Virus record (IMG/VR): IMGVR_UViG_3300032285_004054
Span: 1-64,000 of that record
Reading direction: 5' to 3' (one strand)
DNA length: 64,000 bases
Shown here: positions 1,274-50,137 of the stretch, piece by piece
Numbering within the stretch: the stretch's first letter is position 1
Layout of the letters: every line of letters begins with the position of its first letter
The notes under the pieces: generated by a model
Databases searched by the model: none
What the model saw: only the letters and a program-made list of their open reading frames with translations
What the model was told of the DNA's origin: nothing
Translations under genes and position numbers: made by a program

Positions 1274-1546
1274 TTAATAAGTGTCGAGTGTAGTGCCCAA
1301 ATCTTGTTCTTGGTTAAGAATATTAAATTTTTCTACTGCTTCTTTACCTACACCAGCAACTTGATAAAGGTAACTTTTAGTAATAAAAGAAAGTTCATGT
1401 TTATTTTTAGCAAAAGATTCAATTTCTTTTACCATATGATTAATAGCTTTGATTAGAATTTCGTTGTTTTCATTTTTCATACCTTCAGTATATAGATCTT
1501 TGTTGGACTCTGCAAGAATATTTTCTACAAGTTTATTGAATTTCAT
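1274..1546 (-). CDS. hypothetical protein with capsid-targeting-like leader
   Basis: N-term MKFNKLVENILAES; TAAATA just upstream. Confidence 0.65.
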   Translation of the reverse strand: MKFNKLVENILAESNKDLYTEGMKNENNEILIKAINHMVKEIESFAKNKHELSFITKSYLYQVAGVGKEAVEKFNILNQEQDLGTTLDTY

Positions 1547-1565
1547 ATAGATATATTTATCTTAT

Positions 1566-1594
1566 AGTCTATATGCTTTAAGAGGACTTGTCAA
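1566..1594 (-). promoter_or_regulatory. sigma70-type early promoter
   Basis: TTGACA-17nt-TAGACT. Confidence 0.8.
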
Positions 1595-1806
1595 GAAGAT
1601 TTTGGAGGACAAGGATGATTTGTTTGTTTGTCATAAGTTGTGGTTCTCCCACAAACAGCACATTCACATTCAACTAGAGAATAAGCACTCCATTGTGGAA
1701 TGTGTTCTTCATAAGGATCCCACACAGTTGTTTTACCACAGTGTTCACAAGGAGTAGTTTTAGTGTCTTTAAAACACCAAGTACATTTTAGAAGTTTGTT
1801 TTTCAT
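1591..1806 (-). CDS. small Cys-rich zinc-ribbon protein
   Basis: CTWC, CEHC, CECAVC motifs. Confidence 0.7.
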   Translation of the reverse strand: MKNKLLKCTWCFKDTKTTPCEHCGKTTVWDPYEEHIPQWSAYSLVECECAVCGRTTTYDKQTNHPCPPKSS

Positions 1807-1815
1807 GATTCTTAC

Positions 1816-1844
1816 AGTCTATATGCTTTAGGAGGAGGTGTCAA
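1816..1844 (-). promoter_or_regulatory. sigma70-type early promoter
   Basis: TTGACA-17nt-TAGACT; spacer nearly identical to promoter at 308-336. Confidence 0.85.
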
Positions 1845-2279
1845 TTAATTTCTCAGAATTGTTGTAAAGCCTTCCTGCATTCCATATCCTCCTGTTGATG
1901 GAGCAGTTGGAGGCCACCACACCCTTACTGATGCTGCTGTAGAGGCTGTTGATGAATTGATAAGCATAATTGATACTCCAAACTTTGCATCCCTTAAAGG
2001 AACAACAACACCTAGTTCATTGACATAGATTGTTGACATAGATGGATTGGTTCCACTAGGAAAAGCAATACCATAAATTGGACTAGATGTTGCATCAGAT
2101 GCTGTACACTTTAGATCAACATTAACCTCTCCTAGAATACCTACAGCTTCAGTTCTCTTTACTGTATCCCTAACCATATTCAAGCTCACTGGTATCAATC
2201 CAATCATAGGAATGATACAAAAGCCTAGAATGCCAATAGCTATGATGACCTCAATTAAAGAGAAACCTTTCTTGTTCAT
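1845..2279 (-). CDS. prepilin-type N-methylation domain protein, resembling Verru_Chthon cassette protein B
   Basis: MNKKG|FSLIEVIIAIGIL class III signal (G-1, F+1, E+5), then GLIPVSL..R and VRVWWP. Confidence 0.8.
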   Translation of the reverse strand: MNKKGFSLIEVIIAIGILGFCIIPMIGLIPVSLNMVRDTVKRTEAVGILGEVNVDLKCTASDATSSPIYGIAFPSGTNPSMSTIYVNELGVVVPLRDAKFGVSIMLINSSTASTAASVRVWWPPTAPSTGGYGMQEGFTTILRN

Positions 2280-2283
2280 ATTC

Positions 2284-2838
2284 TTATAGTGTAGTTGTAA
2301 TAATCTTATCCATCAAGCTATTATTATCTCTTTTATAAATGATCTCCATAAGCTTTCTATAATTTGGTTCTGTCTTTACTTCATGTAACAGATTATAGAT
2401 CTCTTCTTCCTCTTCAGTCAAATTAAGAACATCATAATTGAATACATCCCTCTTATGCATCTTCTTTAAGGCTACCTTATGAATCACTCTTATAAAAGGA
2501 TTCAATGGCTTCATATCAGCATAGACTGCTACAATGTCTTCAGGTTTTACTTTCTCCTTGATTTCAAATGCACCTGGATAATTGTTACAAAACCTATCCT
2601 CATTTAGTTTCTTTTTAGATATGTCTACAACAACTATAGCTCTCTTCAAAGATGGTGCAACAACTGCTGCTGATACAGCCTGATTTGTTGCCTTCTCCAT
2701 AGCATAGTCAAACCCTGAATCAAAGACATGCATATTACCAGTTGATACAGACCAGAACATAGTTGTTCCACTCCTGTATCCTTCTTTGAGAATACCTTGA
2801 GCACCCTCTAAAGATGTTCCATGGTAACCAAGTCTCAT
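2284..2838 (-). CDS. putative ADP-ribosyltransferase-fold protein
   Basis: N-term YHGTS..A..IL..G(Y/F) typical of ART/PARP-like folds. Confidence 0.55.
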   Translation of the reverse strand: MRLGYHGTSLEGAQGILKEGYRSGTTMFWSVSTGNMHVFDSGFDYAMEKATNQAVSAAVVAPSLKRAIVVVDISKKKLNEDRFCNNYPGAFEIKEKVKPEDIVAVYADMKPLNPFIRVIHKVALKKMHKRDVFNYDVLNLTEEEEEIYNLLHEVKTEPNYRKLMEIIYKRDNNSLMDKIITTTL

Positions 2839-3227
2839 TAAAAAGGAGGCTGAATCCTTCCAATCTTATAAATCCAATATGGGAATGGTGTGCTGTACCA
2901 AATATCTCGAATCTTGTCCCAAAGCCTTCTATGCCATCGATCTCTCTTATACAGATCAACAGCTACTTCAGAATGCAATACAATTAAATCATGTACAGCC
3001 TTCTTAGGATTGTTTTCATGCTCCTTTCTATAAATGTACCAGCACATCAGTTCATCAATAACTGCATCCTTCCATTTAGTCTCTCTTTGACCTTCATTAT
3101 AAGCTCCTTCCATCTGATATCGAATAAGATGATACAGAGCCTCCTTTGGATCTTTATACTCCATAGCATCGAGACCAGTAATCTCTAACTGCTCTTCAAT
3201 AGCTTCTTTCCAAATGTTCTTAGTCAT
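2838..3227 (-). CDS. hypothetical protein with internal domain duplication
   Basis: WKEAIEEQL..DPKEALYHLI and WKDAVIDEL..NPKKAVHDLI. Confidence 0.7.
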   Translation of the reverse strand: MTKNIWKEAIEEQLEITGLDAMEYKDPKEALYHLIRYQMEGAYNEGQRETKWKDAVIDELMCWYIYRKEHENNPKKAVHDLIVLHSEVAVDLYKRDRWHRRLWDKIRDIWYSTPFPYWIYKIGRIQPPF

Positions 3228-3228
3228 A

Positions 3229-3486
3229 TTATTGGGGCATAGGTGTAGATATTACATAGATCTGATCATTGTCTGTCTCATAGGCCATTGCACTATAGGA
3301 CTCTTCTGGATCTGCTTTGAAGTCACAGAACTGATAAATGCATTGATCAATAGCTTCATTGTGCCTTACAGCATGTTTGTATGATGCATCATCCCAGTTC
3401 TTAGCATCATCCATCTTAATAGAGATCTTTCGACTCTCTAGGATGTTGATGACCTCATCGTTTGTCCAATTGTCTCTCTTGAGCAT
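3229..3486 (-). CDS. hypothetical protein
   Basis: ORF with upstream promoter-like element. Confidence 0.7.
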   Translation of the reverse strand: MLKRDNWTNDEVINILESRKISIKMDDAKNWDDASYKHAVRHNEAIDQCIYQFCDFKADPEESYSAMAYETDNDQIYVISTPMPQ

Positions 3487-3517
3487 GATTTAATATTATA
3501 GGGTTCTTTAGGACAGC

Positions 3518-3739
3518 TCAAGCATCATCTTGCCAGCTCTCTCGCTCTTCAAAGTCTTCTCGATCAGCCCAACCTTCTTCAAAGATATAATCAGTCAATG
3601 CTTGTATCTCATTTGCTTTAGGGTTCCTACCGTCTTGCCGTCGAATACCTACACCTTTCGGATCGAGTATAAAGAAGTAATCAACTCCCTTAAAGGTAAT
3701 CTCTTTGATTTCGTTATTGCTGGATGAAAATTTATGCAT
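3518..3739 (-). CDS. hypothetical protein
   Basis: Probable start MHKFSS at 3739. Confidence 0.65.
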   Translation of the reverse strand: MHKFSSSNNEIKEITFKGVDYFFILDPKGVGIRRQDGRNPKANEIQALTDYIFEEGWADREDFEERESWQDDA

Positions 3740-3740
3740 A

Positions 3741-4190: not shown

Positions 4191-4227
4191 ACAATCAATA
4201 TAGAGGTTTTAAGAAGGCAACACAAGC

Positions 4228-4413
4228 TTAATACCAGTGTCTATTCATTTGTTTTGAGATTTTATAGTTATACTCTTCATTTGTAATATCCTCCAGAATA
4301 GTAGTATAACGATAATAATCGAATGCGTTACTACCTACAAAGAGGCGACGAAGCCAAATGATAAGGTATGCTAATTTAAAACTCATTTTAAACGGTAGTA
4401 GTTTGTTCTTCAT
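4228..4413 (-). CDS. small hypothetical protein
   Basis: Probable start MKNKLLPF at 4413. Confidence 0.5.
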   Translation of the reverse strand: MKNKLLPFKMSFKLAYLIIWLRRLFVGSNAFDYYRYTTILEDITNEEYNYKISKQMNRHWY

Positions 4414-4591: not shown

Positions 4592-4633
4592 ACAAGTATT
4601 ATGAATGCTTTTGCAAGGCTCGGCAAGAAGATT

Positions 4634-5191: not shown

Positions 5192-5236
5192 GATTTTTCT
5201 ATTCTAAAGAAGAATAGATGAATAAGCAAGCTTCAA

Positions 5237-5359: not shown

Positions 5360-5362
5360 ATG

Positions 5363-6039: not shown

Positions 6040-6051
6040 AATAGAATTCTA

Positions 6052-7165: not shown

Positions 7166-7393
7166 ATGGCTACAATTAAGCATTTTGGCGGACAAGATTA
7201 CAAAGTCCTTCACAAAGGGAAGGAATACGGACCTATGTCTATAGAAGACGCTAGAGAGAAAGTAGCTGAAATTGAAGAAGGCGAACGTAACCTTACACCA
7301 GATGAGGTAGCAGCAGGATTTGCTGAAATGAGAAGAAAGTTAAATGGCGAAAGCTTCAGCCAATTTTTTAAATCACGTCAAGTAGACCTTTAA
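7166..7393 (+). CDS. hypothetical protein
   Basis: ORF preceded by ATAAGTA; convergent overlap with next gene. Confidence 0.7.
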   Translation: MATIKHFGGQDYKVLHKGKEYGPMSIEDAREKVAEIEEGERNLTPDEVAAGFAEMRRKLNGESFSQFFKSRQVDL

Positions 7394-7757
7394 AGCTGTC
7401 TCTTGTTTCAGGAGAAAGCATCTTCTCAAGAAAAGATTGCGCAGTTATATTCTGAACAGGTGATAGAGCTTCATTTGTAGCTTTAAATCTATTAAAGATA
7501 GCCCAGAGTATATCATCATATGAACCGTATGTACCATCTTTAAATACCATTTGTAGAACATTGTCTTCTTTCTTTAAAGAATCTTCGTAATCCGAATGTA
7601 CAGCATCTTTAAAGTTACACTTAGGTTGATTACTATAATGTAACGCTAAAACAATCTTATGATAGAATAGAGCTTTAACTTTAACATCGCCATACTTGTC
7701 TTTGTCAAGTGATACATCATCATCAAATGTAATAGTTAATAGGATAGGGTCTTTCAT
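7368..7757 (-). CDS. C-terminal-tag family protein 5
   Basis: Ends LSPETRDSFKGLLDVI. Confidence 0.8.
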   Translation of the reverse strand: MKDPILLTITFDDDVSLDKDKYGDVKVKALFYHKIVLALHYSNQPKCNFKDAVHSDYEDSLKKEDNVLQMVFKDGTYGSYDDILWAIFNRFKATNEALSPVQNITAQSFLEKMLSPETRDSFKGLLDVI

Positions 7758-8392
7758 TAGTCAAGTACGTCTAGTAAACCTCCAAATGCTTTAGCAGTAG
7801 GATCACTTAATTCATCTTTATAACTTTTATCAGTCATAGGGTAGATGTATCTAAAATTATCTGTTTTACCATTAGGGAACAATGTATGGTTCCAGCTTGT
7901 CTTCTTTTGTATGTCAACTGGGAAGCTATTTATGTTAAAATGCCTTGTATGAATAGGTTCAAAGAAGTATAGAGCATCATGATAGTTTATAAAGTTACCA
8001 CCTGTAAAGTATTCAATGTTCGTTTCAAGATCTTTTACTACAGCTAGGAAAGCTACTGTTGGTACTTTTGTTTTTTCAATACCTCTGACCTTAACAATAG
8101 GCCATAATTTTAATTGTAAGAACTTCCAATCATGTCTATAGATAGGAGTATTCTTATCGTAATCTTCGTAATCCTTATGTTTTGGATCTCTCATACGTAC
8201 CTGCTCAAATTGCAGCTGTGTAACTAATCTATAGATTAGTACTGCTTTTAATGCATCTAAAGATTTATGTTCAGTAAACGGCTTAAACGCTTGTTCGGTA
8301 TCTGATGACCAAACAGCAATACTCATAATACTATCAATTGTGCCTTGATAGTAATGACTCTTAATATCGTAATTTATATTGTTAGAGGACAT
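7757..8392 (-). CDS. C-terminal-tag family protein 4
   Basis: Ends LSDPTAKAFGGLLDVLD. Confidence 0.8.
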   Translation of the reverse strand: MSSNNINYDIKSHYYQGTIDSIMSIAVWSSDTEQAFKPFTEHKSLDALKAVLIYRLVTQLQFEQVRMRDPKHKDYEDYDKNTPIYRHDWKFLQLKLWPIVKVRGIEKTKVPTVAFLAVVKDLETNIEYFTGGNFINYHDALYFFEPIHTRHFNINSFPVDIQKKTSWNHTLFPNGKTDNFRYIYPMTDKSYKDELSDPTAKAFGGLLDVLD

Positions 8393-8780
8393 CTAATAAA
8401 CCTCCAAATGTTTCTTCAGTATCTTTTGAAAGAGACTTCTTTAGTATATAATTCTCTCTTTTTGCTAACGGCCACTCTTTATCGAGATATTCTTCAATTA
8501 TCTCTCTTTCTTCATAGTCTATAGGTTTACCTAGAACTCTATTACCGAACTCATCTTTTTCTAAATTGTAACAGCCTCCGTCATATCTGCGACCTCTGTC
8601 ATCTTCATCTTTCCATATGACTATATCTCGTTTACCGTCTAAGATTAGATACCAAGCCCAGTGCATGTTCTCAGGACCATCGCGATGCTTTTTAAGATCA
8701 ACAAATTCTATAGTAATACCAACAACATGATTGCCGCCATAACGATCTGTTGGGTATGTTGTTTTGTAAATATTACTCAT
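8382..8780 (-). CDS. C-terminal-tag family protein 3
   Basis: Ends LSKDTEETFGGLLDVL. Confidence 0.8.
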   Translation of the reverse strand: MSNIYKTTYPTDRYGGNHVVGITIEFVDLKKHRDGPENMHWAWYLILDGKRDIVIWKDEDDRGRRYDGGCYNLEKDEFGNRVLGKPIDYEEREIIEEYLDKEWPLAKRENYILKKSLSKDTEETFGGLLDVL

Positions 8781-9142
8781 ATAACGTCAAGTAGTCCTCC
8801 AAATGAATCTTTAGTTTTCTTAGACAGATGTTTCTCTATTTTATATTTTTCAATAGCTTTGTCAATTTGAGAGGATAATTCATCCAATGCACCAATATAA
8901 CCATCACCCTCATCTTTCATTCCTAAAACGTTTCTCCATTCTCCGTTTTGATATTTTGAATCAGTAGTCCAAGGCCATTCTCTAGTTTTGTTCCAAGTCA
9001 TCTTCAATCCATCAACTACAATATCGACAAGCATATCATCGGAGTAAGCCTGATTAGGTGAGTCTTCGTTGTAGTAGACATCACTCTTAATTTGTATATC
9101 GTACACTCTTTCTTTTGATTCAAAGAATTTCTTAAATGACAT
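8777..9142 (-). CDS. C-terminal-tag family protein 2 with capsid-targeting-like leader
   Basis: Starts MSFKKFFESK; ends LSKKTKDSFGGLLDVI. Confidence 0.8.
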   Translation of the reverse strand: MSFKKFFESKERVYDIQIKSDVYYNEDSPNQAYSDDMLVDIVVDGLKMTWNKTREWPWTTDSKYQNGEWRNVLGMKDEGDGYIGALDELSSQIDKAIEKYKIEKHLSKKTKDSFGGLLDVI

Positions 9143-9572
9143 CGATTAAACCTCCAAATGAATTTCTTGTATCTTTTGAGAGTGTTCTCTTTAGGTATTC
9201 ACTCTCTGGTTCTATTTTATAATCTTCATCTACTAACCCGTTCATTAAGTCTCTGTACTCTTCAGGAGCTACAAAGCGGGTAATCATATTCATAAATGTA
9301 GTGCTATCGCTTTTGCTGTCAAGCTTTATTTTTATAATCATTTTTCCATTGCCTATCTCATCCATGTCTATATTATTCACAACATCAATTCCTTTGATAT
9401 TATTACCGTAACCCTCCGGACCAGATCTAACAATATACTCAAAACGCTCAAATATATCTAGATTTGTTTTCTTTTGCCTCTCAGCTTCTTCTTCATTGAT
9501 ATACAATGTAACATAAACAACAGAGTCTAAAGACTCCGTCAGTAGAAGTTTCAATGCATGATCAAGATTCAT
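9132..9572 (-). CDS. C-terminal-tag family protein 1
   Basis: Starts MNLDHALKLLLTES; ends LSKDTRNSFGGLIDVI. Confidence 0.8.
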   Translation of the reverse strand: MNLDHALKLLLTESLDSVVYVTLYINEEEAERQKKTNLDIFERFEYIVRSGPEGYGNNIKGIDVVNNIDMDEIGNGKMIIKIKLDSKSDSTTFMNMITRFVAPEEYRDLMNGLVDEDYKIEPESEYLKRTLSKDTRNSFGGLIDVI

Positions 9573-34683: not shown

Positions 34684-35643
34684 ATGGCAACACAACGTTT
34701 TGACGATCTTTATAAGAAGCTTCTTCAAGAAGCAACACCTGTAGTAGGAGACCTAGAAGGTTTTTCTGGCGGTCTTAAGTCCGGTATTGAAAGCTCACCA
34801 GGTAATGCATATCTAATCGGTGACCTAGCAAACGCTCTCGGTAAGTCTAAGGTCGAAATTATTGATCTAATCGCAGATGATCTCTATAAGAAAGTATTCG
34901 GTGACGAAGGTGTTAACCCTGCTAATTCTGAAGAAGAGTATAGAGACGCTATTGCCAATGCTATTTCTGATATCGTAAAAGAGCTTAAGTCAAAGAACCC
35001 TGATCTCAAGGTACCTGGTGCTAAGGCTATTGCAGGCTATACAGCACGTATTGTTGCTAAGCTCGGTCAGGTAACTCGTGACTTCTCCGGTCAAGCATCT
35101 GAAGATGACATACATCAAGCCGTTACAGACGCTTCTGGTGAAGAAGATGAAGAGCGCGGTGAACAAGGTGATGATGCTGATGGTACTGAAAACGAAGAGC
35201 TTCCCATCACATCTGATGATGAAGAGATTGTAGCAGGGCAAGCACCTGATGTTGCTGAAGAACCTACACGTCCTTTTAGTTCAGAGGGAACATATGAGCT
35301 TCAAGATGTTAAAGCTGGTCTTCTAAAGGGAGAAGCTAATGACGCATATCAAGCCCTTTCACGTGCTGGTGCCTCTGATGGCGCTGAAGGATCTGAAATC
35401 TCTGACGTTCTTAAGAGAGCAGGTATTACAGTAAGCAAGATTGGTAGTGTTATTAACACACTTATTCGCAACCGTGCACTAGTACGTACAGATAGTCCAG
35501 CTGGTGGAGGTGCTGAAGCTCCTGAAGGACCAGTTAAGAGTGACGATAAGGAATGGATTAAGAACTACCTCAAAGGTACCGGTGCTCTAGATGATTATCA
35601 AAAGTCCGGTGGTGGTTATGACCACGGAGTAGACTTCGGTTAA
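34684..35643 (+). CDS. acidic late protein, probable internal head protein
   Basis: TAAATA upstream; leader RFDDLYKKLLQEA; D/E-rich linker. Confidence 0.7.
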   Translation: MATQRFDDLYKKLLQEATPVVGDLEGFSGGLKSGIESSPGNAYLIGDLANALGKSKVEIIDLIADDLYKKVFGDEGVNPANSEEEYRDAIANAISDIVKELKSKNPDLKVPGAKAIAGYTARIVAKLGQVTRDFSGQASEDDIHQAVTDASGEEDEERGEQGDDADGTENEELPITSDDEEIVAGQAPDVAEEPTRPFSSEGTYELQDVKAGLLKGEANDAYQALSRAGASDGAEGSEISDVLKRAGITVSKIGSVINTLIRNRALVRTDSPAGGGAEAPEGPVKSDDKEWIKNYLKGTGALDDYQKSGGGYDHGVDFG

Positions 35644-37944: not shown

Positions 37945-39933
37945 TTATAAAATACCTAAAAGGTCTTCAAAAGATCCTTTTGTTTCGTCAGACATATTAT
38001 CTAGTATGTCTAAGTCTTCTAACTCTTTCTTTATCTTTTCGTCTGAATCAAACTTAGTACTATCCCCGTCATATTTTAATCCTTCTTGACGTGCAATGCC
38101 TCTCAGTGTTGTAAGAGGGTTATTACTAAAATCATAATAAACACGATATGATTTATCATTATTGAGAAGTTTTTTAGGAGAACCTACAAGACTGGAGAGT
38201 TGATTGTTAGCTATATCTATCATCGAACCGCCTATCTCTTCTGGTAACCCTTCTAAAGATCTTAAATGGTTATTTGTTAAAGCTATATTACCGCCAATTG
38301 TACTTGGTGCACCTTTTACGCTTGTTAATGATTTACACTTTCTTACTACTAGATCACCTGTAATTGTTGATGGACAACCTTCTAGGCTTTGTAAACTAAT
38401 ACAATCATCAATATATATACCAGGTATAGTAGCAGGTAGACCTTTTAAACTTGCAAGGTTTTTACAGTTACCAATAATATATTTTGTATCATTCCTGCCA
38501 CGTACTCTAATTTCTTGAGTTATACCTGTTAAGTCAAATATACCTAAATTGTCTAGTCGTACGCTACCTAAACAAGACTGAGGTAAACCTTCTAAACTTT
38601 TTAATCTCATGCAATCAGCTATAAAAATACTACCTTTAACAGGAACAGAAGCTCCTTTTAAATCTGTTATCTTTAAATTTCTTAATTCAAGTCTATGAGT
38701 ACTATAAGCACTATCAGGTTCTGCTTCAGCACAAGTTGCAGGCATTCCTTTTAAGCTAGTTATATTTGTTTCTTTACCGTCTATATCTATAGTACCGGTA
38801 ACAGCCATAGGTAAGAACGATAAATCATTTAATTGTTGAAAAGGTGTTTGTGTAACAATTTTAGAATTTTCTCTATAGCCATCTTTAGCATCATTAACAT
38901 CAAAAATAAAACTACCATCAACAATATAATTTTTAAACGAATACGGATTACTAAGTCCTACTTCAAAGTATCTTACATCACCTTTAATAACTTTATTACC
39001 TCTTTCTTCAACTACACGGAAGACATTTTCAATTAGATACTCATCTGTAACTTTTGTTCTATTTATTTTTGTATGTTGATTATACGAAGCGTATACTTTT
39101 AACATCGTATCTTTTACTTTAGCGATACTTTGTTTTGTTACACCTAAATCTTCTGGAGCAAATAGTTCATCAGTTCTATTAACAACCGGAAAACGTATTA
39201 CATATTTTATAGGTACTAAAGATTCTAAAAGATAAGGTGTATTTGTATCTCCGTAATCTCCAATATATCTAGTAATTTTTAAAGTACCTTTTGGTTTAAG
39301 AGTCTTTTCAGGTAACCTATTTCTTCTCATGAAGACTAGCTTACCTGGCAGTATAGGTTCAAACCCAGTTTTATTCTTAATGCTATCGTCTATTGTGTAA
39401 TCTTTTGTAGCTAGAATTATATTAACCCATTGACCGTTTTTAGCTTTTACTTCTAAAGGTTGATCAAGCCATTTAAAACCTATAATAGGGTTTGTTATAA
39501 CCTGTTTAACAGCTTCTTCTATATCAGGTTTAGATTCATAGTCAGTAGGTACGTTAGCATTATTAGCTGCTTGTTTGAATCCATAATCATGTGGATCAAT
39601 ATCTACTGTAGGATCGGTATACTTCTTAGCTACTTGTAAGTCTTTAAAAGGACCGAAGATGAATTGACTATGAATAGGTACAACAGCTCCATCTCCGAAC
39701 TTAATTGCAAACTTGGAATAAGCTCCTGGTACATTTTTATAACCTACAACTTCACCTACTTGGTTAAGATAGGGAAGAGCTTTCTTAGAGTGATAAGATA
39801 GATACCCCATTCCAGGAGCATCTCTAACGACAACTATATTACCGTTATTAAACTTAGCACGAGGAGGAGGCGCGATGTAATCATCGACCTTAAAAACCGG
39901 TACTGCTTCTTCGATGTACTCCTTAAAGGACAT
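37945..39933 (-). CDS. LRR-like repeat protein with capsid-targeting-like leader and C-terminal tag
   Basis: MSFKEYIEEA; L.SL.G.P..I.G repeats; ends MSDETKGSFEDLLGIL. Confidence 0.85.
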   Translation of the reverse strand: MSFKEYIEEAVPVFKVDDYIAPPPRAKFNNGNIVVVRDAPGMGYLSYHSKKALPYLNQVGEVVGYKNVPGAYSKFAIKFGDGAVVPIHSQFIFGPFKDLQVAKKYTDPTVDIDPHDYGFKQAANNANVPTDYESKPDIEEAVKQVITNPIIGFKWLDQPLEVKAKNGQWVNIILATKDYTIDDSIKNKTGFEPILPGKLVFMRRNRLPEKTLKPKGTLKITRYIGDYGDTNTPYLLESLVPIKYVIRFPVVNRTDELFAPEDLGVTKQSIAKVKDTMLKVYASYNQHTKINRTKVTDEYLIENVFRVVEERGNKVIKGDVRYFEVGLSNPYSFKNYIVDGSFIFDVNDAKDGYRENSKIVTQTPFQQLNDLSFLPMAVTGTIDIDGKETNITSLKGMPATCAEAEPDSAYSTHRLELRNLKITDLKGASVPVKGSIFIADCMRLKSLEGLPQSCLGSVRLDNLGIFDLTGITQEIRVRGRNDTKYIIGNCKNLASLKGLPATIPGIYIDDCISLQSLEGCPSTITGDLVVRKCKSLTSVKGAPSTIGGNIALTNNHLRSLEGLPEEIGGSMIDIANNQLSSLVGSPKKLLNNDKSYRVYYDFSNNPLTTLRGIARQEGLKYDGDSTKFDSDEKIKKELEDLDILDNMSDETKGSFEDLLGIL

Positions 39934-39945: not shown

Positions 39946-40434
39946 TTACTTTACAGAATAAATCCGATAAAGAATTCTAACAGGATCCTCTGACTTATCT
40001 TCAGCAATTTCGTGTAGATGTTGCTTTGTAAACTTGTCAAAGGCATGCTTGTCGGCGTAGTCCTTAATAAATTGCTTTAAAGAGTTGACATCTATTTCAC
40101 GGAACTTAGAAGGTGAGAAGTTTGTGATATCAAGATTGAATGCATCATCAATCTCGTCTCCTAAATCACGAATAATGTTACGTTGAAGACCTGTATTAAA
40201 ATGAGAATATAACTTCTTTTCAGACTTAAAAGGTCTGTAAGGAGCTTCATCTTCGTAGTCTTCAACTGTAGCTGTAGGAAGTGCTGTTTCAAGTACAGCG
40301 TTAAAGCTAGGTGTATTTTCCTTTAGGATCTTGGCGTACTTAGATTCCTTAAGAATATTACGCTCTTCATCAGTAAGCTTCTTTCCTTTTAGGAAATAGT
40401 CTTCAGCAAGTCTTTTGAGTTCTTTTTTATTCAT
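39946..40434 (-). CDS. hypothetical protein (probable internal head protein)
   Basis: Repeated ILKE/VLE motifs; in late block. Confidence 0.65.
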   Translation of the reverse strand: MNKKELKRLAEDYFLKGKKLTDEERNILKESKYAKILKENTPSFNAVLETALPTATVEDYEDEAPYRPFKSEKKLYSHFNTGLQRNIIRDLGDEIDDAFNLDITNFSPSKFREIDVNSLKQFIKDYADKHAFDKFTKQHLHEIAEDKSEDPVRILYRIYSVK

Positions 40435-40438: not shown

Positions 40439-41929
40439 TTATTCTCCTCCCTTCATGATCTTAACGACCTTAGGTAGTGTAGTCTTTAAGAACTTCTCCT
40501 TAATAGCAGGATCGTAATTCCAGTGTTGGAGGAATTCCATAGTACCTGCAAATTGCTTTGTAGGTAGATCTGTTCTAAGGTTAGTCCAAAGAATGGTTAC
40601 CCATTCAGGGTGTAGATGATTACTAAGTGTAGCTAATCCTGCGAGTATATCCAGGTCATCCTGTGTAGGTTCTTTACCTCCTGCTACATCATTTGTAACA
40701 ACTCTAACCTTATTAATGAAGAAAGATACGAGAGCATTAAGCTTGTTAATGTTAGACTTATCAACATATGAATCAGGATTAGCTAACATATGCTTAATAT
40801 CAAATGAACGAAGATGCTGAATGAATTCAACGAACTTAGCACCCCACTTCCAACCACACTTAGCAGAAGCATATGTATTGATAAGCTTGTAGAGACCTAC
40901 TTCATTAGCTCTACCGTTTTGCTCATCTTCGTAATACTTCTCGTAAATCTTCTTTAAGATCTTTGTTAAAGCTTTAAAGCTACGAGGTGAAGGAGCGCCA
41001 CTATTAGCTTTTGGCTTATAGATGAAATTCTCTTCAGGAGCTGATTTAACGAAAGCAACAATACGAGGATCAATCTTAGCGTGTTCGGCCCACTTAAGCC
41101 ATTCATGTGGATCAGCTACTAGTACACCGGCTGTAAAACGAGATGTTAAAGCTTCTTCAAGTTCATCATCTCTATCTGTTAGGTTACCAGCACCCATTAC
41201 AGCGATTTCACTACCTAATTGTTCGTCACCGATTTGACGTTCTTCAGAGTTAACAACGGAATAAAGAGACTGACGTACGTCTTGACGACCTTGATTAATT
41301 TCGTCAAAGAAAAGAATACCATCAGCTTCAGGACGAGTTACAAAAGCAATCCAGTCCATCTTTTTATACTGTAAGAAGTCTTCAGGTGATGTTAGATTAG
41401 GAATACCTGAGAAGTCAGAAGGTTCCAGACGCTTTGTTCTTACGTCAACAAGTACGAAATATTGTGTAGGGTTCTTGATATACTCAGCCTTTTGAGCTGC
41501 ACTTGATCTATTCCATTCAGCGAACTTTTTACCTTTTTGCTTAGATATAGCATCACCGATATTCTTAATAATAGCACTCTTACCGATACCAGGTTCACCG
41601 TATATAAGTAATGGTTCTTTTGTATCGTAGGATAAATTGACCATCATGTAGAAGGTCTTATAATCCATCTCAGGGAGATCTGTCTCCATATAAGGACGGA
41701 TAGCAGGGTCATCCATCGCACGAATATTGTCGAGATCAGGATTATCAACAGGTAGCTTAGGAGGATTTTGATTTAAGCTCTGTACTAAACCGGCTCCTTG
41801 TTGAGCAGTTTGTGCTGCTTGTGGATTTGAAGGAGCAGGAGCTGCAGCAGCTGCTTTTGGTTTAGGAGCTTCATTTAGTATGTTACTATAAGCTTCCTGT
41901 AAAGACATAATATCCTTAAAAAGTTTCAT
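40439..41929 (-). CDS. MoxR-type AAA+ ATPase
   Basis: GEPGIGKS, EP.DF.G.P, ILFFDEIN, AGN, AL.SRF, SPRS; TATAAATA upstream. Confidence 0.9.
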   Translation of the reverse strand: MKLFKDIMSLQEAYSNILNEAPKPKAAAAAPAPSNPQAAQTAQQGAGLVQSLNQNPPKLPVDNPDLDNIRAMDDPAIRPYMETDLPEMDYKTFYMMVNLSYDTKEPLLIYGEPGIGKSAIIKNIGDAISKQKGKKFAEWNRSSAAQKAEYIKNPTQYFVLVDVRTKRLEPSDFSGIPNLTSPEDFLQYKKMDWIAFVTRPEADGILFFDEINQGRQDVRQSLYSVVNSEERQIGDEQLGSEIAVMGAGNLTDRDDELEEALTSRFTAGVLVADPHEWLKWAEHAKIDPRIVAFVKSAPEENFIYKPKANSGAPSPRSFKALTKILKKIYEKYYEDEQNGRANEVGLYKLINTYASAKCGWKWGAKFVEFIQHLRSFDIKHMLANPDSYVDKSNINKLNALVSFFINKVRVVTNDVAGGKEPTQDDLDILAGLATLSNHLHPEWVTILWTNLRTDLPTKQFAGTMEFLQHWNYDPAIKEKFLKTTLPKVVKIMKGGE

Positions 41930-41945: not shown

Positions 41946-43796
41946 TTATACGTCGACAGGGAATACTTTGCCCTTTTTCTCTAAAATGTCGTATCTACCA
42001 TCACCATTAACCATGAAAATTAGATTCTTTTGAGGGTTCTTAACTTCAGGTAATTGAGGATTATCTTCAACGTAACCGTCAGTGAAGTAAATGATATTAT
42101 CGACCTTTGTTATTTTTAAATGATCTAGTAATTTCTTAACACTTGACATTAAAGTGCCGCCTTCCTTAACAGGGAGCTGTTTAACCTTGGCCATAATAGC
42201 AGGTACAGATGATTTTTTACTATTTACAATCTCGTGATAATAAGCATTAACATTCCAAAGAATGAGCATTAATTCTACTTCCTTAAACTGTTTTAATAAC
42301 TGGAAAATATAACCAATATAGATGCTAAGCACTTCATCGTTAATAGAACCACTTGTATCGATAGCAATAATGGTTTTAACCTTCTCTTGCTCTTTTATAG
42401 TGCGTCCTTGATAAACAAGATTAGATGCTCCTCTACTACCTGTAGCAGCAGCCATTCTAATATTAGGCTTGGACATATCAGATCTTAGCTGATTAGAAGG
42501 TTTAATAACATCCTTTAAGATTTGTCTCCAATCTACTTTAACCTTTTCTTCACCGAACTTATTACGAAAACCGCCTTCAGCATTACCTCTGTTAGAGGCC
42601 TGTTGCTTAGCTCGATCAACCTTATTCCTCATATCGGCTTTCTTTTGAGCTTCAGTTGTCCCTGGTGCAGGCTGGTTCTTATTGTAGATAGGGTTATCTG
42701 AAGGCATATTAACTTGTCCCGGAGATCCCTTACCTGCTGTAATATGCTTATCGAGTTGTTCTTGTTTACCTGCTAGTGATTCTTTGAATGTAGTATCGTC
42801 TTTTAAGCCTTGGTCTTCTTTTTGTTGACCGCCTTGTCCCTGACCTTTACCTTGTTGTTGCTGTTGATCGTCTTGTCCTTGGCCCTGACCTTCTTGTTCG
42901 TTGCCTTGTTGACCTTGAGCTTGTTGATCACCTTGCCCAGGCTGTGGTTGCCCGCTTTGACCTTGACCAGGCTGTGGTTGCCCGCTTTGACCTTGACCTT
43001 GTTGAGAGTTGCCTTGTTGATTCTGATTCTGGTTACCTTTCTTCTTCTCTTGTTCGTTGTCGAGCTTCTCAAATACCTTGTAAAGCTCTTCAGCTGTCAT
43101 GTCGGTAATGTCTGTACCTGCTACCTCCATAGCATGTTCCATAGGAGGTAGTACCCAACGACCACCTTCCTGTAGCGGTAGACAGCCAATAGAAGGAAGT
43201 TTATAACCAGACTCAAGAATATCTCTATTCATGACGAAGTCAGTAGCAACGTTCCAGAGTGTATGATCTTTGCGACCTTTTCTAAAGAATGTATTATTAG
43301 CAATGTGAAGAGTCTCGTGTAATAGAACACCAATAACTTCTTCGTAAGAAAGCTGCTTTAAAGCAAAATTGGGATTAATATAGATATTCCCGTAATCATC
43401 TACACCCATTGTAGGTACATCGTATGTAACTACTGTTTTAAGATTCTGTAATAGAATACCATAGTAAGGAGCGCGCTTATAAAGTTCGTAACGTGCTCTT
43501 GTTAGAAGGTTATCGAGTCTTGTAAGCTCATCTGTAGAAAGTTCTTGATACTGATTCTCTTGAGAGTTAAGCGCGACATCGAGCTGTCTTTCAATTTCAT
43601 CAATCTGCTCATCAGACATCCCTTGTTTCTTTAATTCCTTTCTCTGCTTATCAGACATCTTATAAGGCTCACCAGGCTTTCTAGGGTTAGGATTTTCGTT
43701 AACCTCGGTTAATAGCCTACTTTGAGGTAATCTAGCTTCAAAAATCAATCTAGAATAGACACTCGAAAGCTGTTTGTCTTCTTTTCTATAGTACAT
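41946..43796 (-). CDS. metallopeptidase + VWA domain protein (DUF2201-type)
   Basis: T.GVD..G.IY.NP.F, HETLH, WN.A.D; Q/G linker; IDTSGSI, GGT, FTDG MIDAS. Confidence 0.9.
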   Translation of the reverse strand: MYYRKEDKQLSSVYSRLIFEARLPQSRLLTEVNENPNPRKPGEPYKMSDKQRKELKKQGMSDEQIDEIERQLDVALNSQENQYQELSTDELTRLDNLLTRARYELYKRAPYYGILLQNLKTVVTYDVPTMGVDDYGNIYINPNFALKQLSYEEVIGVLLHETLHIANNTFFRKGRKDHTLWNVATDFVMNRDILESGYKLPSIGCLPLQEGGRWVLPPMEHAMEVAGTDITDMTAEELYKVFEKLDNEQEKKKGNQNQNQQGNSQQGQGQSGQPQPGQGQSGQPQPGQGDQQAQGQQGNEQEGQGQGQDDQQQQQGKGQGQGGQQKEDQGLKDDTTFKESLAGKQEQLDKHITAGKGSPGQVNMPSDNPIYNKNQPAPGTTEAQKKADMRNKVDRAKQQASNRGNAEGGFRNKFGEEKVKVDWRQILKDVIKPSNQLRSDMSKPNIRMAAATGSRGASNLVYQGRTIKEQEKVKTIIAIDTSGSINDEVLSIYIGYIFQLLKQFKEVELMLILWNVNAYYHEIVNSKKSSVPAIMAKVKQLPVKEGGTLMSSVKKLLDHLKITKVDNIIYFTDGYVEDNPQLPEVKNPQKNLIFMVNGDGRYDILEKKGKVFPVDV

Positions 43797-47255: not shown

Positions 47256-47297
47256 ATAATTTCAAAGAACTATGTATAGTTTATATTCTAACTATAT

Positions 47298-47840
47298 TTA
47301 TTCAACTGAATAGTTAATGTTCATTATAACTCTTCTAGGCACTGTTGTAGGTGTAGTACCTGCATGATACTGTTGACCGTCAAAGCATAACAGTCTATTC
47401 CTTTTAGGTAGTACTTCTGCCTGTACAGTGAAATCTGTAGGCGTTATAGCACTTTCTCTTTCATTGTAGATTATAGTTGGACCGTCAGAATCATTTATGT
47501 ATAAAAGAGCAGTACGATGGTTACCGTCCCTATCAACATGAGCTCCTGCATTGTATGGTTTATCTGTTGCAGTGTTTAAAATCATACGCACCCTAAAAAC
47601 ATCTTTAACGTTTTCTCCAGCAAGCTGTAAAATCCTATAAACTGTTCTAGCAAATATACCTTGTTCACCTTCTACCCAGGTAAGACCTCCGGTTATAATA
47701 TGAAACCAGCTATACAGAAACAAATTGTCTTCTTCTGAGCCGTTACCCTTTCTTCCGAAGTACCAAGGAAACTTACCCATTACTTTGTGTTCAAGTATTG
47801 CGAATTCCTCTTCGGGTAAAATATTATCAATTATTTTCAT
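47298..47840 (-). CDS. 2OG-Fe(II) oxygenase
   Basis: IIDN.L, H.D, LLYIN.SDG.T, PK.NR...FDG..YH, R...N.N. Confidence 0.88.
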   Translation of the reverse strand: MKIIDNILPEEEFAILEHKVMGKFPWYFGRKGNGSEEDNLFLYSWFHIITGGLTWVEGEQGIFARTVYRILQLAGENVKDVFRVRMILNTATDKPYNAGAHVDRDGNHRTALLYINDSDGPTIIYNERESAITPTDFTVQAEVLPKRNRLLCFDGQQYHAGTTPTTVPRRVIMNINYSVE

Positions 47841-48510
47841 TAAAATACGATAGAAAAATCTCTTTAAGAGCTTTCGAAGTTTGTTTTATAGATTTTACTT
47901 CAGATTTATTAAATTTTAAGTTCAAAATATCTTTTGAATCAATTGTCATATAAGCATTGAGTTCATCTAAAAGAACTTTTTTACAATACCCCATTTCAAT
48001 AAGATGTTTATAAATTGTATCTTTAACATTCTTATCTAGCTTTTTGAGTATATTATTAACTTTCTTCTTATAATTTTTATCTAGATAATAAAAAGCGTGA
48101 CATAACTCATGATCTAGAGTGCTTTCGCTTAATCCATTTGAACCAATAAAATAGAAGTTATCACTACCTACTTTTTCTTTTGCACGGAAGTATATATCGT
48201 TCAATACCTTATCGTAAGTATTCGGATCATCAATACCTAAACGAAAGTGTTCGGTAAGTACTTTACCCGGAATATTAAACCCTGCCCAGTCATCTGGATA
48301 CGTAAACGTTGTATAACCATTATGTCTGGCGTACATACGCATGAACTCAATCATGGTGAATTTCTTACCACGAATTGCTTTTAAAGGTGATTCGTAAAAC
48401 TCCTGCGCTCTACAAAACGTCATTGTAAGATCATATTGATCTTTAATAATAATATGAAAAATATTATCAGTTATCTCCTGAACAATTATATCAATAGGTG
48501 GCTGCTTCAT
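47827..48510 (-). CDS. putative HExxH metalloprotein
   Basis: F.R.QEFYESP, W.GFN.P, DHELCHA, DE..AY. Confidence 0.7.
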   Translation of the reverse strand: MKQPPIDIIVQEITDNIFHIIIKDQYDLTMTFCRAQEFYESPLKAIRGKKFTMIEFMRMYARHNGYTTFTYPDDWAGFNIPGKVLTEHFRLGIDDPNTYDKVLNDIYFRAKEKVGSDNFYFIGSNGLSESTLDHELCHAFYYLDKNYKKKVNNILKKLDKNVKDTIYKHLIEMGYCKKVLLDELNAYMTIDSKDILNLKFNKSEVKSIKQTSKALKEIFLSYFNENN

Positions 48511-49142
48511 TAAGCAACGTTACGGTTAACCCAAATTTGAAGCTTAGAGAGCTTTTGCTGAGCCCAATAAATTCCTCTAGAAACCTTGAACCAAAACTTA
48601 GACCAACGATTAAAAGTAATCTTATTCAGAAACTTCTTAGTTTTAGTCCAGGGATGATTTTCATAAGCAAGCCATTCATTCTGCCATTTTACCTCTCGAG
48701 CTTGGTTTTCTTCTGCTGTAATAGAAATCTCTCCTTTTACGAGTTCAAGAGAAACAAGCTTACCTTTAATAAACTCAGCATCAAACTCGATATCCCAGGT
48801 ATTACCTTCTTCATCTTCTCTATAATCATAGAAGTTGATTGTGTCGGTGATTAGTTTCTTTACTGAGGTTCTGCTAGTTTCTACAAACTTATAAGGCCAG
48901 CACCACTTACCTTGCTTTTTAAGTTTTGCTTCTTCCTCTTCTGTTACTGTACGGATATGCTCTCCTTCTACCTTTTCAGTGTAGAGGTAACCATTCTTCT
49001 TAATATGGTAAGCAGTCATTGTATTATCCAAATCTTTAGTTTGGAAGTCTACTTTAGTCCAATCCTTATTAGGAAAGGCTTTTTTAATTTCTTTAGTTAA
49101 AGGGAGCTTGCGCTCCACATAGACTGTATCGAACATACCCAT
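48510..49142 (-). CDS. conserved phage protein (MGMFD family)
   Basis: MGMFD.V, FQTKDL.N, I.FY, W.IEF.A.F..G; own sigma70 promoter. Confidence 0.75.
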   Translation of the reverse strand: MGMFDTVYVERKLPLTKEIKKAFPNKDWTKVDFQTKDLDNTMTAYHIKKNGYLYTEKVEGEHIRTVTEEEEAKLKKQGKWCWPYKFVETSRTSVKKLITDTINFYDYREDEEGNTWDIEFDAEFIKGKLVSLELVKGEISITAEENQAREVKWQNEWLAYENHPWTKTKKFLNKITFNRWSKFWFKVSRGIYWAQQKLSKLQIWVNRNVA

Positions 49143-49177
49143 AATTTTTATATTAGAGGCTTTTAAATGAACGGCAA

Positions 49178-50137
49178 CTAGATTATATCTATTAACCCCT
49201 TAAAAGTATTTTTTGTCTTCGGTGTTAATTTGTTAATAATGGACTTCTTTAGAACATATCTCTTCATAGGTTCTTTATAAGTGTAATGTTTAGCAAAGTA
49301 TTTACAGAAGTCATCCTCTGAATAATCTCTTATTTGTCCTTTTTCTTTTTCTATTTTTAAAACGTTTAACGAGTTATTATATACATCATCTAAAAGCTTC
49401 TTATCTGTCTGCATATTATCTAGTATTCGATCCCAGACATCAAAATTGTCTTCGTCATCGTCTTCTTTGTAATCGTCAATCATACATACTATAGCATCTT
49501 CTATAGCTAGCTTAAACACTGCATCGCTTACAGAATTTTCTACAAGAATTGAACCGACTATACTGTTAAAGCTTTCTTTCATAGGTATCTTGCTAAACTC
49601 TTGATCTAGATAATTACTTATTTCTTCATCTGATTTAAAAAGACTAGATTGTAATCTAATAGCTATACCACCTTTATTGTTCCAAGCATCTACATAAGGA
49701 GGGAAATCATCGATAAGAACATTCGGTGTACCATCTTCGTTTATAGCGTAAATTGATTTGTTTTGAGGATACTCAACACCTTTAAAATACTTTCCGTACT
49801 TCGGTATAATATGCTTCTTAATCCATTCACTTTTTCCCTTCTTGCATTCTTCTATATCAATACTCGCAGGATGAGAACAAATCTTAAAAGAACCAAACTT
49901 CTCTATAACTTTTCTTATTAAAGCGTCATTAGTAGGGTATGGTTCAAGGTTTGCAAATACCTCGTAAACATCACCTAGATGATTGTGAAACTCTTGTTTA
50001 TCTTTCCAGATCTTTCTAGCTTCTTGCTTCTCTTCTGGTGTAATATCTTTATAATCTTTATGATATAACTTATGCGCTATTGTATCGAACAAGTTTGCAA
50101 GCAAACCGTCCATATCAAGATAGCAAATAGGGTTCAT
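49178..50137 (-). CDS. HAD 5'(3')-nucleotidase-like domain fused to tagged C-terminal domain
   Basis: YLDMDGLLA, K..W, K..YA, LIDD, W...GG; ends LTPKTKNTFKGLIDII. Confidence 0.85.
   Translation of the reverse strand: MNPICYLDMDGLLANLFDTIAHKLYHKDYKDITPEEKQEARKIWKDKQEFHNHLGDVYEVFANLEPYPTNDALIRKVIEKFGSFKICSHPASIDIEECKKGKSEWIKKHIIPKYGKYFKGVEYPQNKSIYAINEDGTPNVLIDDFPPYVDAWNNKGGIAIRLQSSLFKSDEEISNYLDQEFSKIPMKESFNSIVGSILVENSVSDAVFKLAIEDAIVCMIDDYKEDDDEDNFDVWDRILDNMQTDKKLLDDVYNNSLNVLKIEKEKGQIRDYSEDDFCKYFAKHYTYKEPMKRYVLKKSIINKLTPKTKNTFKGLIDII

What the first reader, a model, noticed from the sequence alone, without database searches (positions are those of the whole stretch)
1274..49582. Dispersed family of T4-like capsid-targeting/protease leaders on late genes
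The leaders are MSFKEYIEEA (39933), MSFKKFFESK (9142), MKFNKLVENILAES (1546), MNLDHALKLLLTES (9572), RFDDLYKKLLQEA (34684), LQEAYSNILNEA (41929), YSRLIFEA..LLTEV (43796) and internal MKESFNSIVGSILVENS (49582). They resemble the T4 internal-protein targeting sequence and gp21 (I/L)xE cleavage sites. Most follow a TAAATA box. They define a predicted set of head-packaged proteins that partly overlaps the C-tag set, so there may be two signals.
Basis: partly seen in the sequence, partly recalled or inferred. Interest (0 to 1): 0.62.

Follow-up and report, generated by a model that had tools for sequence, protein, structure and literature searches.

The report
Predicted capsid-targeting leaders, T4-like phage
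A giant, uncultured relative of phage T4 puts the same short N-terminal peptide on some thirty otherwise unrelated proteins, and this peptide most likely sends them into the assembling virus head and is then cut off by the head protease, as T4's internal proteins are; no virion data exist to confirm it.

Summary
All eight peptides are at the stated coordinates: seven at ORF N-termini, one internal. They belong to a real N-terminal motif. It has an aromatic residue or Leu, two hydrophobic residues three and four positions later, then Glu followed mostly by Ala or Ser. A short form has Glu at residue 8-9 and a long form at 13-16.

The window is the first 64 kb of a 218.4-kb uncultured, distant T4-like myovirus. 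Outside the window the genome encodes:
- a gp21-type prohead protease with an intact His/Ser/Asp triad
- a gp22-like scaffold
- a gp23 capsid protein
- a gp55 late sigma factor

The motif's conserved positions have the spacing of the T4 IPIII capsid-targeting residues mapped for targeting (4, 7) and processing (8, 10). The leaders lie outside the predicted fold. Orthologues at 35-81% identity keep them. They occur on unrelated proteins: an LRR protein, a MoxR ATPase, a VWA protein, a 319-aa protein and the scaffold.

Best reading: cleavable prohead-targeting propeptides, confidence about 0.55.

Caveats:
- No virion data exist.
- Outside the paralog family the statistics are modest.
- One of the two VWA sites is not conserved.
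- Gene 1274-1546 looks early.
- The C-terminal tag is a separate, unexplained signal.

The parts
37945..39933 (-). 662-aa protein with an LRR-like C-terminal half. It has a short leader (residues 1-10, nt 39904-39933) and a C-terminal tag, with a TAAATA box 4 nt before the ATG. This is the closest match to the T4 targeting sequence.
   Evidence: Orthologues in L123, L124 and L125 keep the leader. Against L123 there are six synonymous changes in the first 12 codons. No homology to T4 Alt.
40439..41929 (-). MoxR-type AAA ATPase. It has an N-terminal extension: a leader with two L-x-E-A sites (residues 1-21, nt 41867-41929), then a Pro/Ala-rich linker. The ATPase domain starts near residue 85.
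   Evidence: AAA_5, bpMoxR. Of the 17 homologues aligned (29-81% identity), most keep a hydrophobic-x-E-A-(A)-P leader followed by a linker. Homologues of 370-388 aa and the N4 gp24-like ATPases lack the extension.
41946..43796 (-). DUF2201 metallopeptidase-like plus VWA protein. Its N-terminal 32 residues (nt 43701-43796) hold two candidate sites.
   Evidence: The first site (I-F-E-A) is lost in L123. The second (L-T-E-V) is kept there as L-V-E-A, and comparable sites exist in L124 and L125.
34684..35643 (+). 319-aa protein of unknown family with a long leader (residues 1-17, nt 34684-34734), behind a TAAATA box.
   Evidence: Three orthologues at 38-39% identity keep F6, L9, L13, E16, P19 and V20.
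9132..9572 (-). First gene of a five-gene array of tag-bearing paralogs. It has a long-form leader with Leu in place of Phe (residues 1-14, nt 9531-9572), a TAAATA box and a C-terminal tag.
8777..9142 (-). Array paralog with a short leader (residues 1-9, nt 9116-9142) and a C-terminal tag. Its ATG lies inside the last codons of the upstream tag (11-nt overlap), and the GGAGG of the tag serves as its ribosome-binding site.
7368..8780 (-). Three further array paralogs (7368-7757, 7757-8392, 8382-8780). They carry the C-terminal tag but no leader.
   Evidence: An orthologue of 8382-8780 is present in L124.
1274..1546 (-). 90-aa protein with a long leader (residues 1-14, nt 1505-1546) and no tag. 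It lies behind both a sigma-70-like promoter and a TAAATA box.
49178..50146 (-). Fusion of an NT5C 5'-nucleotidase domain (residues 1 to about 185) with a tag-bearing unit. The long motif is internal (residues 189-205, nt 49532-49582), in the linker. There is no TAAATA box and no ribosome-binding site before the internal ATG.
39946..40434 (-). 162-aa protein kept between the ATPase and the LRR protein in all four lineages. Its N-terminus carries a conserved hydrophobic-A-E site.

Best explanation
**What it is.** The peptides are N-terminal propeptides of the kind T4 uses on its internal proteins, Alt, scaffold and protease.

**How it works (inferred).**
- A two- to three-turn amphipathic helix presents an aromatic residue at i and hydrophobic residues at i+3 and i+4. 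This tethers the precursor to the scaffolding core while the prohead assembles.
- The helix ends in a hydrophobic-x-Glu site, mostly followed by Ala or Ser and often by Pro two residues later.
- The phage's gp21-type serine protease cuts this site once the shell is closed.
- The mature protein is left free inside the head, to be ejected with the DNA.

**Cargo.**
- Arrays of small, fast-diverging paralogs, comparable to the variable internal-protein loci of T-even phages.
- A large LRR protein.
- Probably a MoxR ATPase with its VWA partner.

**Shown here.** The motif and its N-terminal bias. Its conservation in orthologues. Its position outside the predicted fold. The presence of an apparently active gp21-type protease, and comparable sites on scaffold, protease and capsid protein.

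**Inferred only.** Binding to the core, cleavage, packaging and ejection.
For: **T4-type head machinery is present.**
- gp23 capsid protein, E = 7e-90. gp21 protease, E = 7e-29, with the His/Ser/Asp triad kept. gp22-like scaffold and portal.
- Homologues of gp55, gp43, gp44, gp46 and gp47.

**The phage's own prohead proteins carry the same kind of site, conserved across 60-80 relatives.**
- The scaffold starts M-[N/D]-F-K-x-I-L-K-E and continues to L-I-T-E.
- The protease starts with two F-L-V-E sites.
- The capsid propeptide ends in a conserved x-F-E followed by [A/S] just after the ENQEK block it shares with T4 gp23.

**Match to the T4 signal.**
- In IPIII, residues 4 and 7 serve targeting and residues 8 and 10 serve processing (PMC9026906).
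- The short leader here conserves F3, hydrophobic 6, hydrophobic 7 and E9.
- The T4 core peptide finds the N-terminus at 39933 as its best hit among 67,243 positions.

**Modular use on unrelated proteins**.
- On enzymes it is followed by a flexible Pro/Ala linker.
- The extension is absent from homologues in other phage types.

**Selection on the peptide.**
- It is kept in orthologues of the LRR protein, the ATPase and the 319-aa protein, in the arrays of three further lineages, and in the 100-aa family near the capsid gene.
- Synonymous changes occur inside the leader, and divergence is faster behind it.

**Position in the fold.** In the AlphaFold2 model of an array member, the core has pLDDT about 90. 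Residues 1-9 are below 50 and detached.

**N-terminal enrichment**.
Against: - There are no virion, proteomic or expression data. The phage is known only from metagenomes.
- Amphipathic N-terminal helices are common. Outside the paralog family, the loose motif is only about 1.7 times enriched over internal windows.
- Within the arrays, residues 1-4 are fixed by the 11-nt overlap with the preceding tag. They covary with it: D-V-I-stop with M-S-F, D-V-L-stop with M-Y-F, D-E-L-stop with M-N-F.
- The motif is not always N-terminal. It is internal in the nucleotidase fusion. It forms the very C-terminus of a 61-aa Lys-rich protein at genome 184652-184837.
- An AAA ATPase, a VWA protein and a nucleotidase are unusual head cargo.
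- One of the two VWA sites is not conserved.
- Gene 1274-1546 looks early.
- The capsid protein's own predicted site has Cys at P3 in most relatives. The specificity assumed here is therefore looser than T4's.
Confidence: 0.55

Rival explanations
1. The N-terminal helix is a docking peptide for some other common partner, not the prohead. Candidates are the conserved neighbouring MoxR ATPase/VWA module, a replication or transcription hub, or the membrane. On this reading it is not cleaved.
For: - The module VWA, MoxR ATPase, 160-aa protein and LRR protein, with tag arrays beside it, is syntenic in four lineages, and its members all carry the motif.
- The motif also works in principle at an internal position and at a C-terminus, where cleavage would remove nothing.
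- The leader is predicted helical, which is not the extended shape a protease substrate takes.
Against: - The motif always ends in Glu followed by a small residue, which a pure docking helix would not need.
- The same pattern heads the scaffold and the protease, which are prohead proteins by homology.
- The spacing equals that of the mapped T4 signal (PMC9026906).
- In T4 the same ten residues both dock and are cut.
Confidence: 0.22
2. The similarity is only inheritance and gene-overlap constraint. The small proteins are tandem paralogs. Their first codons are dictated by the overlapping tag, ribosome-binding site and stop of the upstream copy, and the peptide has no function of its own.
For: - BLASTP links 16 members of the family, which shares a core fold.
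- 11-nt overlaps carry GGAGG inside the tag codons. The last tag residues covary with residues 2-3 of the next gene, in two lineages.
Against: - Residues 5-10 lie outside the overlap and are the conserved ones.
- First genes of arrays and solitary genes, which overlap nothing, keep the motif.
- Unrelated proteins carry it and keep it at 35% identity.
- In L125 the tag is a different sequence, but the leader is the same.
Confidence: 0.13
3. The pattern is chance plus compositional bias. AT-rich codons for Phe, Lys, Asn, Ile and Glu are favoured at the start of genes in an AT-rich genome with near-leaderless mRNAs.
For: - GC content is 34-39%.
- Most genes have no ribosome-binding site, and a TAAATA box lies about 6 nt before the ATG.
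- The loose motif is only modestly enriched outside the family.
Against: - Shuffling each N-terminal window, which keeps its composition, gives 6.9 where 27 are seen.
- The held-out profile test is positive.
- Synonymous changes occur with conserved residues.
- Only a minority of TAAATA genes have the motif.
Confidence: 0.05

Closest known systems
Capsid-targeting sequence (CTS) of T4 internal proteins IPI, IPII and IPIII (Mullaney and Black 1996, as reviewed in PMC9026906 and PMC3012670)
   Same: - About 10 N-terminal residues.
- Aromatic residues at i and i+3 (targeting), then a hydrophobic residue at i+4 and Glu at i+6 (processing), followed by Ala.
- Carried by otherwise unrelated, fast-evolving small proteins in variable loci.
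- The genome encodes a gp21-family protease and a gp22-like scaffold.
   Different: - The cargo proteins have no sequence homology to the T4 IPs.
- The signal sits one residue closer to the Met.
- A second, longer form (Glu at 13-16) exists.
- About 30 carriers against a handful in T4, including enzymes.
- Many carriers also have a conserved C-terminal tag.
- Function is untested here.
N- and C-terminal propeptides of T4 Alt, gp21, gp22, gp67, gp68, gp23 and gp24, cut at (L/I)-x-E (PMC5694885, PMC9026906)
   Same: Scaffold, protease and capsid protein of this phage have hydrophobic-x-E sites at the equivalent places. A large (662-aa) late protein carries a short N-terminal leader, as Alt does.
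   Different: The 662-aa protein is not an Alt homologue. Its C-terminal half is LRR-like. P3 is often Phe or Val, and in the capsid protein Cys, rather than Leu or Ile.
Propeptides of phiKZ, 201phi2-1 and SPN3US head and ejection proteins (PMC5694885)
   Same: Many head proteins are processed after Glu by a distant gp21 homologue. Paralogs keep identical N-termini while the rest diverges.
   Different: Those propeptides are mostly longer than 100 residues. They have small residues (S/A/G) at P3. The phages are not T4-like in capsid protein or scaffold.
Encapsulin cargo-loading peptides (comparison from general knowledge, not tested)
   Same: A short terminal peptide on a flexible linker loads unrelated enzymes into an HK97-fold shell. 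This is a useful analogy for the leader-plus-linker architecture and for the C-terminal tag.
   Different: Encapsulin peptides are usually C-terminal, bind the shell protein itself and are not cleaved. No homology is claimed.

Membership tests
T4-type capsid-targeting / gp21-cleaved propeptide | The genome encodes a gp21-family (Peptidase S77) prohead protease with its catalytic triad. | tested here: met
   Genome 109623-110297(-). Pfam PF03420, E = 7e-29. 34% identity to T4 gp21 with His, Ser and Asp aligned. Matches PDB 5jbl.
T4-type capsid-targeting / gp21-cleaved propeptide | The signal lies in the first 10-20 residues of the precursor. | tested here: met
   Seven of the eight claimed leaders. 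The exception is the internal copy at 49582. Genome-wide N-terminal bias is shown.
T4-type capsid-targeting / gp21-cleaved propeptide | The signal ends in the gp21 consensus (L/I)-x-E. | tested here: met
   Strict consensus in seven of eight. The leader at 9142 has Phe at P3. Across the family P3 is F, V, I or L, so the consensus is broader than in T4.
T4-type capsid-targeting / gp21-cleaved propeptide | Spacing of the mapped targeting residues (IPIII 4 and 7) and processing residues (8 and 10). | tested here: met
   Short form: F3, hydrophobic 6, hydrophobic 7, E9. T4 sequence read from the record. Best proteome-wide match is at 39933. Mapping is from PMC9026906.
T4-type capsid-targeting / gp21-cleaved propeptide | The signal is shared by proteins whose mature parts are unrelated. 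| tested here: met
   LRR protein, MoxR ATPase, VWA protein, 319-aa protein, scaffold and several small ORFans.
T4-type capsid-targeting / gp21-cleaved propeptide | The precursor is incorporated into the prohead through the signal. | not testable with these tools
   Uncultured phage. The one complex prediction allowed gave no verdict.
T4-type capsid-targeting / gp21-cleaved propeptide | The propeptide is removed after the Glu in mature virions. | not testable with these tools
   No virion proteome exists for this clade.
T4 internal proteins / Alt (as protein families) | Sequence homology of the mature protein to IPI-III or Alt. | tested here: not met
   No PHROG or Pfam hit for the small proteins. 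No similarity of the 662-aa protein to Alt.
phiKZ-type head propeptides | Long propeptide (over 100 residues) with S/A/G at P3 before Glu. | tested here: not met
   Leaders are 9-32 residues long with a hydrophobic P3.

The most novel reading that the evidence does not exclude
This clade loads its head with a large and rapidly diversifying cargo: more than 25 small proteins, an LRR protein, and a complete MoxR ATPase/VWA machine. It does so with a two-part address. The first part is a cleavable N-terminal T4-like targeting helix that is ancient and shared across lineages. The second is a lineage-specific C-terminal tag. The tag's codons also carry the ribosome-binding site and start codon of the next paralog, so each tandem duplication automatically makes a new, correctly addressed and translationally coupled cargo gene.
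Probability: 0.25. Interest if true: 0.75.

Novelty: new member of a known kind. Interest (0 to 1): 0.5.

Why it matters
- **Reach of the T4 system.** If right, the T4 capsid-targeting and processing system is far older and more widely used than the T-even phages in which it was defined. A simple sequence rule would then predict the injected protein arsenal of a large uncultured clade of giant freshwater-type T4 relatives.
- **Likely cargo.** The predicted cargo includes hypervariable small proteins, which are likely counter-defence factors by analogy with T4 IPI. Unexpectedly, it also includes an AAA ATPase with its VWA partner.
- **Practical use.** It would provide new, short packaging tags for loading foreign proteins into phage heads.

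Tried and rejected
**Searches and predictions that gave nothing.**
- **Complex prediction.** Protease against residues 1-35 of the ATPase, with my own alignments. Score 0.01, 'no answer'. This is neither for nor against binding.
- **Fold search.** The array-member model against the PDB gave no match at E <= 0.001.
- **Pfam and PHROGs.** No families for the small leader-bearing proteins, apart from unnamed ones.
- **Megablast of the region against phage records.** No match.
- **Degenerate DNA pattern for the tag in IMG/VR.** Only the same phage (L094) had real tags. The other 29 loci were chance hits.
- **Family profile and ATPase in five partial relatives (51-66% complete).** Nothing found, which proves nothing.
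- **ATPase as a single query in IMG/VR.** Nothing.
- **The 213.8-kb relative behind L123.** It could not be searched whole because the record is not held.

**Ideas tested and dropped.**
- **The 662-aa protein as a T4 Alt homologue.** Rejected.
- **The short leader alone as a search profile.** Two examples of 8 residues are too unspecific in relatives' six-frame ORFs.

**Procedural points.**
It was redone by reading the peptides from coordinates.
- Code 11 was used throughout.
- My ORF set is a crude longest-ORF call. For example, it dropped 1274-1546 in favour of an overlapping ORF, so genome-wide counts are approximate.

Full report
**What the window is.**

The window is the first 64 kb of a single 218,400-bp contig. 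GC content is 34-39%.
- No phage record matches it at the DNA level.
- The genome carries the T4 head module outside the window:
  - gp23-type capsid protein, genome 106935-108404, PF07068, E = 7e-90, at most 35% identical to any cultured phage
  - portal
  - gp22-like scaffold, 108462-109436
  - gp21-type prohead protease, 109623-110297, PF03420, E = 7e-29
- The protease is 34% identical to T4 gp21, with the catalytic His, Ser and Asp aligned.
- Homologues of gp43, gp44, gp46, gp47 and the late sigma factor gp55 are present.
- IMG/VR holds about 600 contigs of a related uncultured clade, of which the 80 best were kept, with capsid protein 65-82% identical.

**The observation.**

Seven are ORF N-termini. 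The eighth is internal, in a fusion of an NT5C nucleotidase domain with a C-terminal unit.

Six of the eight follow a TAAATA box. That box precedes 82 of 317 ORFs, typically 6 nt before the ATG. Among them are the protease, scaffold and portal genes. Only 24 ORFs have a Shine-Dalgarno-like sequence.

**The motif.**

- It has an aromatic residue or Leu at i, hydrophobic residues at i+3 and i+4, then Glu, mostly followed by Ala or Ser.
- The short form has Glu at residue 8-9.
- The long form adds one helical turn and places Glu at 13-16.

**Is it more than chance?**

- Hydrophobic-x-E-[A/S] occurs in residues 5-20 of 29 of 317 ORFs, against 3.3% of internal windows (p = 1e-6).
- When each N-terminal window is shuffled, which keeps its composition, the fuller motif is seen 27 times against 6.9 expected.
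- A profile built only from the four long leaders in the window was run on the 46,530 positions of proteins encoded outside the window. Its top three hits, and five of its top eight, are N-terminal, against 4.5% expected.
- In the relatives' capsid neighbourhoods, the same profile picks out the N-terminus of a conserved protein of about 100 aa.
- The limit: with the paralog family removed, the loosest motif is only about 1.7 times commoner at N-termini than inside proteins. For non-family proteins the case therefore rests on orthologue conservation.

**The carriers.**

*Paralog family.*
- BLASTP links 16 small paralogs. 22 genes genome-wide end in a conserved C-terminal tag, seven of them in the window, and 14 of the 22 also have the leader.
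- In the arrays, each ATG lies 11 nt inside the preceding gene. The GGAGG inside the tag's Phe-Gly-Gly codons is the next gene's ribosome-binding site.
- A related contig, L122, has the same arrangement with a different tag ending. The second residue of the next gene is correspondingly different. Residues 1-4 of array members are therefore constrained by the overlap.
- Residues 5-10 are not so constrained. First-in-array and solitary genes keep the whole motif.
- In L125 the tag is a different sequence altogether, while the leader and the 11-nt overlaps persist.
- The AlphaFold2 model of one member has a confident core (pLDDT about 90). The leader (residues 1-9, below 50) and the tag (52-61) lie outside it.

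*Unrelated carriers.*
- **MoxR ATPase.** It has a leader with two L-x-E-A sites, followed by a Pro/Ala linker ahead of the domain. Most of the 17 aligned homologues (29-81% identical) keep a hydrophobic-x-E-A-(A)-P leader and a linker. Shorter homologues and the N4 gp24-like ATPases lack the extension.
- **LRR-like 662-aa protein.** It keeps its leader in three other lineages. Against L123 there are six synonymous changes in the first 12 codons, and divergence is faster behind the leader.
- **319-aa protein.** Its orthologues keep F6, L9, L13, E16, P19 and V20.
- **VWA protein.** The first claimed site is lost in the nearest relative and the second is kept.

**Why a T4-type targeting and cleavage signal is the best reading.**

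- *T4 sequences.* Read from the T4 record, IPII and IPIII begin with the known ten-residue targeting sequence. gp22, gp21, gp67, gp68, Alt and Inh all have hydrophobic-x-E near their N-termini.
- *T4 genetics.* Genetic mapping assigned IPIII residues 4 and 7 to targeting and residues 8 and 10 to processing (PMC9026906).
- *Spacing.* The conserved leader positions here (3, 6, 7, 9) have exactly that spacing.
- *Best match.* The T4 core peptide scores best, among 67,243 positions, at the N-terminus at 39933.
- *This phage's own prohead proteins.* The scaffold and protease begin with the same kind of sites, conserved across the clade. The capsid propeptide ends in a conserved site just after the ENQEK block shared with gp23.
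- *Precedent.* Variable arrays of small proteins that share only a targeting peptide are what T-even internal-protein loci look like (PMC3012670, PMC9026906).

**What argues against, and rivals.**

- There are no virion data. The complex prediction gave no verdict.
- The motif also occurs internally. It also forms the exact C-terminus of a 61-aa Lys-rich protein. This suggests it is first a docking helix and only secondarily a cleavage site.
- Rival readings:
  - a docking peptide for another partner, for example the syntenic MoxR/VWA module (0.22)
  - pure paralogy plus overlap constraint (0.13)
  - compositional chance (0.05)
- Gene 1274-1546 lies behind a sigma-70-like promoter in an early-looking cluster, so 'late genes' is not uniformly true.

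**Comparison and novelty.**

The system works like the T4 capsid-targeting sequence and meets every membership feature that can be tested in silico. Packaging and cleavage cannot be tested here. The carriers are not homologues of the T4 IPs or Alt.

I file it as a new member of a known kind. Three features are unusual:
- the number of carriers
- enzymes among the carriers
- the coupling to a second, C-terminal tag

The tag's function is open. A clamp-binding reading is not excluded, because the DNA polymerase tail looks similar.

Noticed in passing
window 7368-9572, 37945-39933, 49178-50146; genome 194210-199008, 208212-210714: 22 genes end in a conserved tag of about 16 residues (L-S-K-D-T-x-x-S-F-G-G-L-L-D-V-[I/L]-stop). 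The tag's codons contain GGAGG and the ATG of the next paralog (11-nt overlap). Relatives carry lineage-specific versions: ending I-D-E-L in L122 and L124, and W-x-R-A-L-x-V-L in L125. Function is unknown.
   Followed up: partly
genome 159642-162185 and 79339-80238 (outside the window): The gp43 DNA polymerase homologue and an RNase H-like protein end in hydrophobic, Asp-containing tails that resemble the C-terminal tag. T4 gp43 ends in its clamp-binding S-L-D-F-L-F-G. The tag could therefore be a sliding-clamp-binding tail rather than a packaging signal.
   Followed up: no
whole genome; e.g. window 39934-39945, 41930-41951, 43797-43812: A TAAATA box precedes 82 of 317 ORFs, with a modal gap of 6 nt to the ATG. 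Only 24 ORFs have a Shine-Dalgarno-like sequence. With a T4-type late promoter and gp55 present, this implies leaderless or nearly leaderless late mRNAs.
   Followed up: partly
window 37945-43796; L123 8169-13775; L124 8184-13948; L125 4089-8621: Conserved synteny in four lineages: DUF2201/VWA protein, MoxR ATPase, a 150-160-aa protein, then the large leader-and-tag LRR protein. In L124 and L125 the tag arrays lie directly beside this module.
   Followed up: partly
genome 184652-184837 (+), outside the window: A 61-aa Lys-rich protein ends exactly with the long leader motif, with Glu as its last residue. A hairpin terminator follows. It is nearly identical to the internal motif of the nucleotidase fusion at window 49532-49582.
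   Followed up: partly
genome 194210-195175 (-), outside the window: A 321-aa protein made of three tag-bearing units in tandem, each ending in a tag-like sequence. It is a fused array.
   Followed up: no
window 1566-1594 and 1816-1844 (-): Two identical sigma-70-like promoters (TTGACA, 17 nt, TAGACT) lie in front of consecutive small minus-strand genes. The block 300-6700 looks like an early-gene cluster with a repeated upstream sequence.
   Followed up: no
window 43821-43895, 44040-44130, 46290-46373 (-): Three tRNA genes (Cys-GCA, Thr-TGT and a 91-nt Ser-type with anticodon ACT as called by ARAGORN). The last call is unusual and was not checked.
   Followed up: no
window 20079-29838, 55538-60160; genome 81989-84046: A six-member paralog family of large tail-fibre-like proteins. 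A second pair (17169-19601 and 24730-27756) has no PHROG match.
   Followed up: no
genome 111171-111629 (-), outside the window: A TnsA-like endonuclease N-terminal domain protein (PF08722, E = 2e-17) sits between the head protease and the neck genes.
   Followed up: no
genome 192179-193859 (-), outside the window; L124 6008-6358: Five tandem small genes whose N-termini share a hydrophobic-x-E-A-Y variant of the motif. The same variant forms the first site of the ATPase leader at window 41929.
   Followed up: partly
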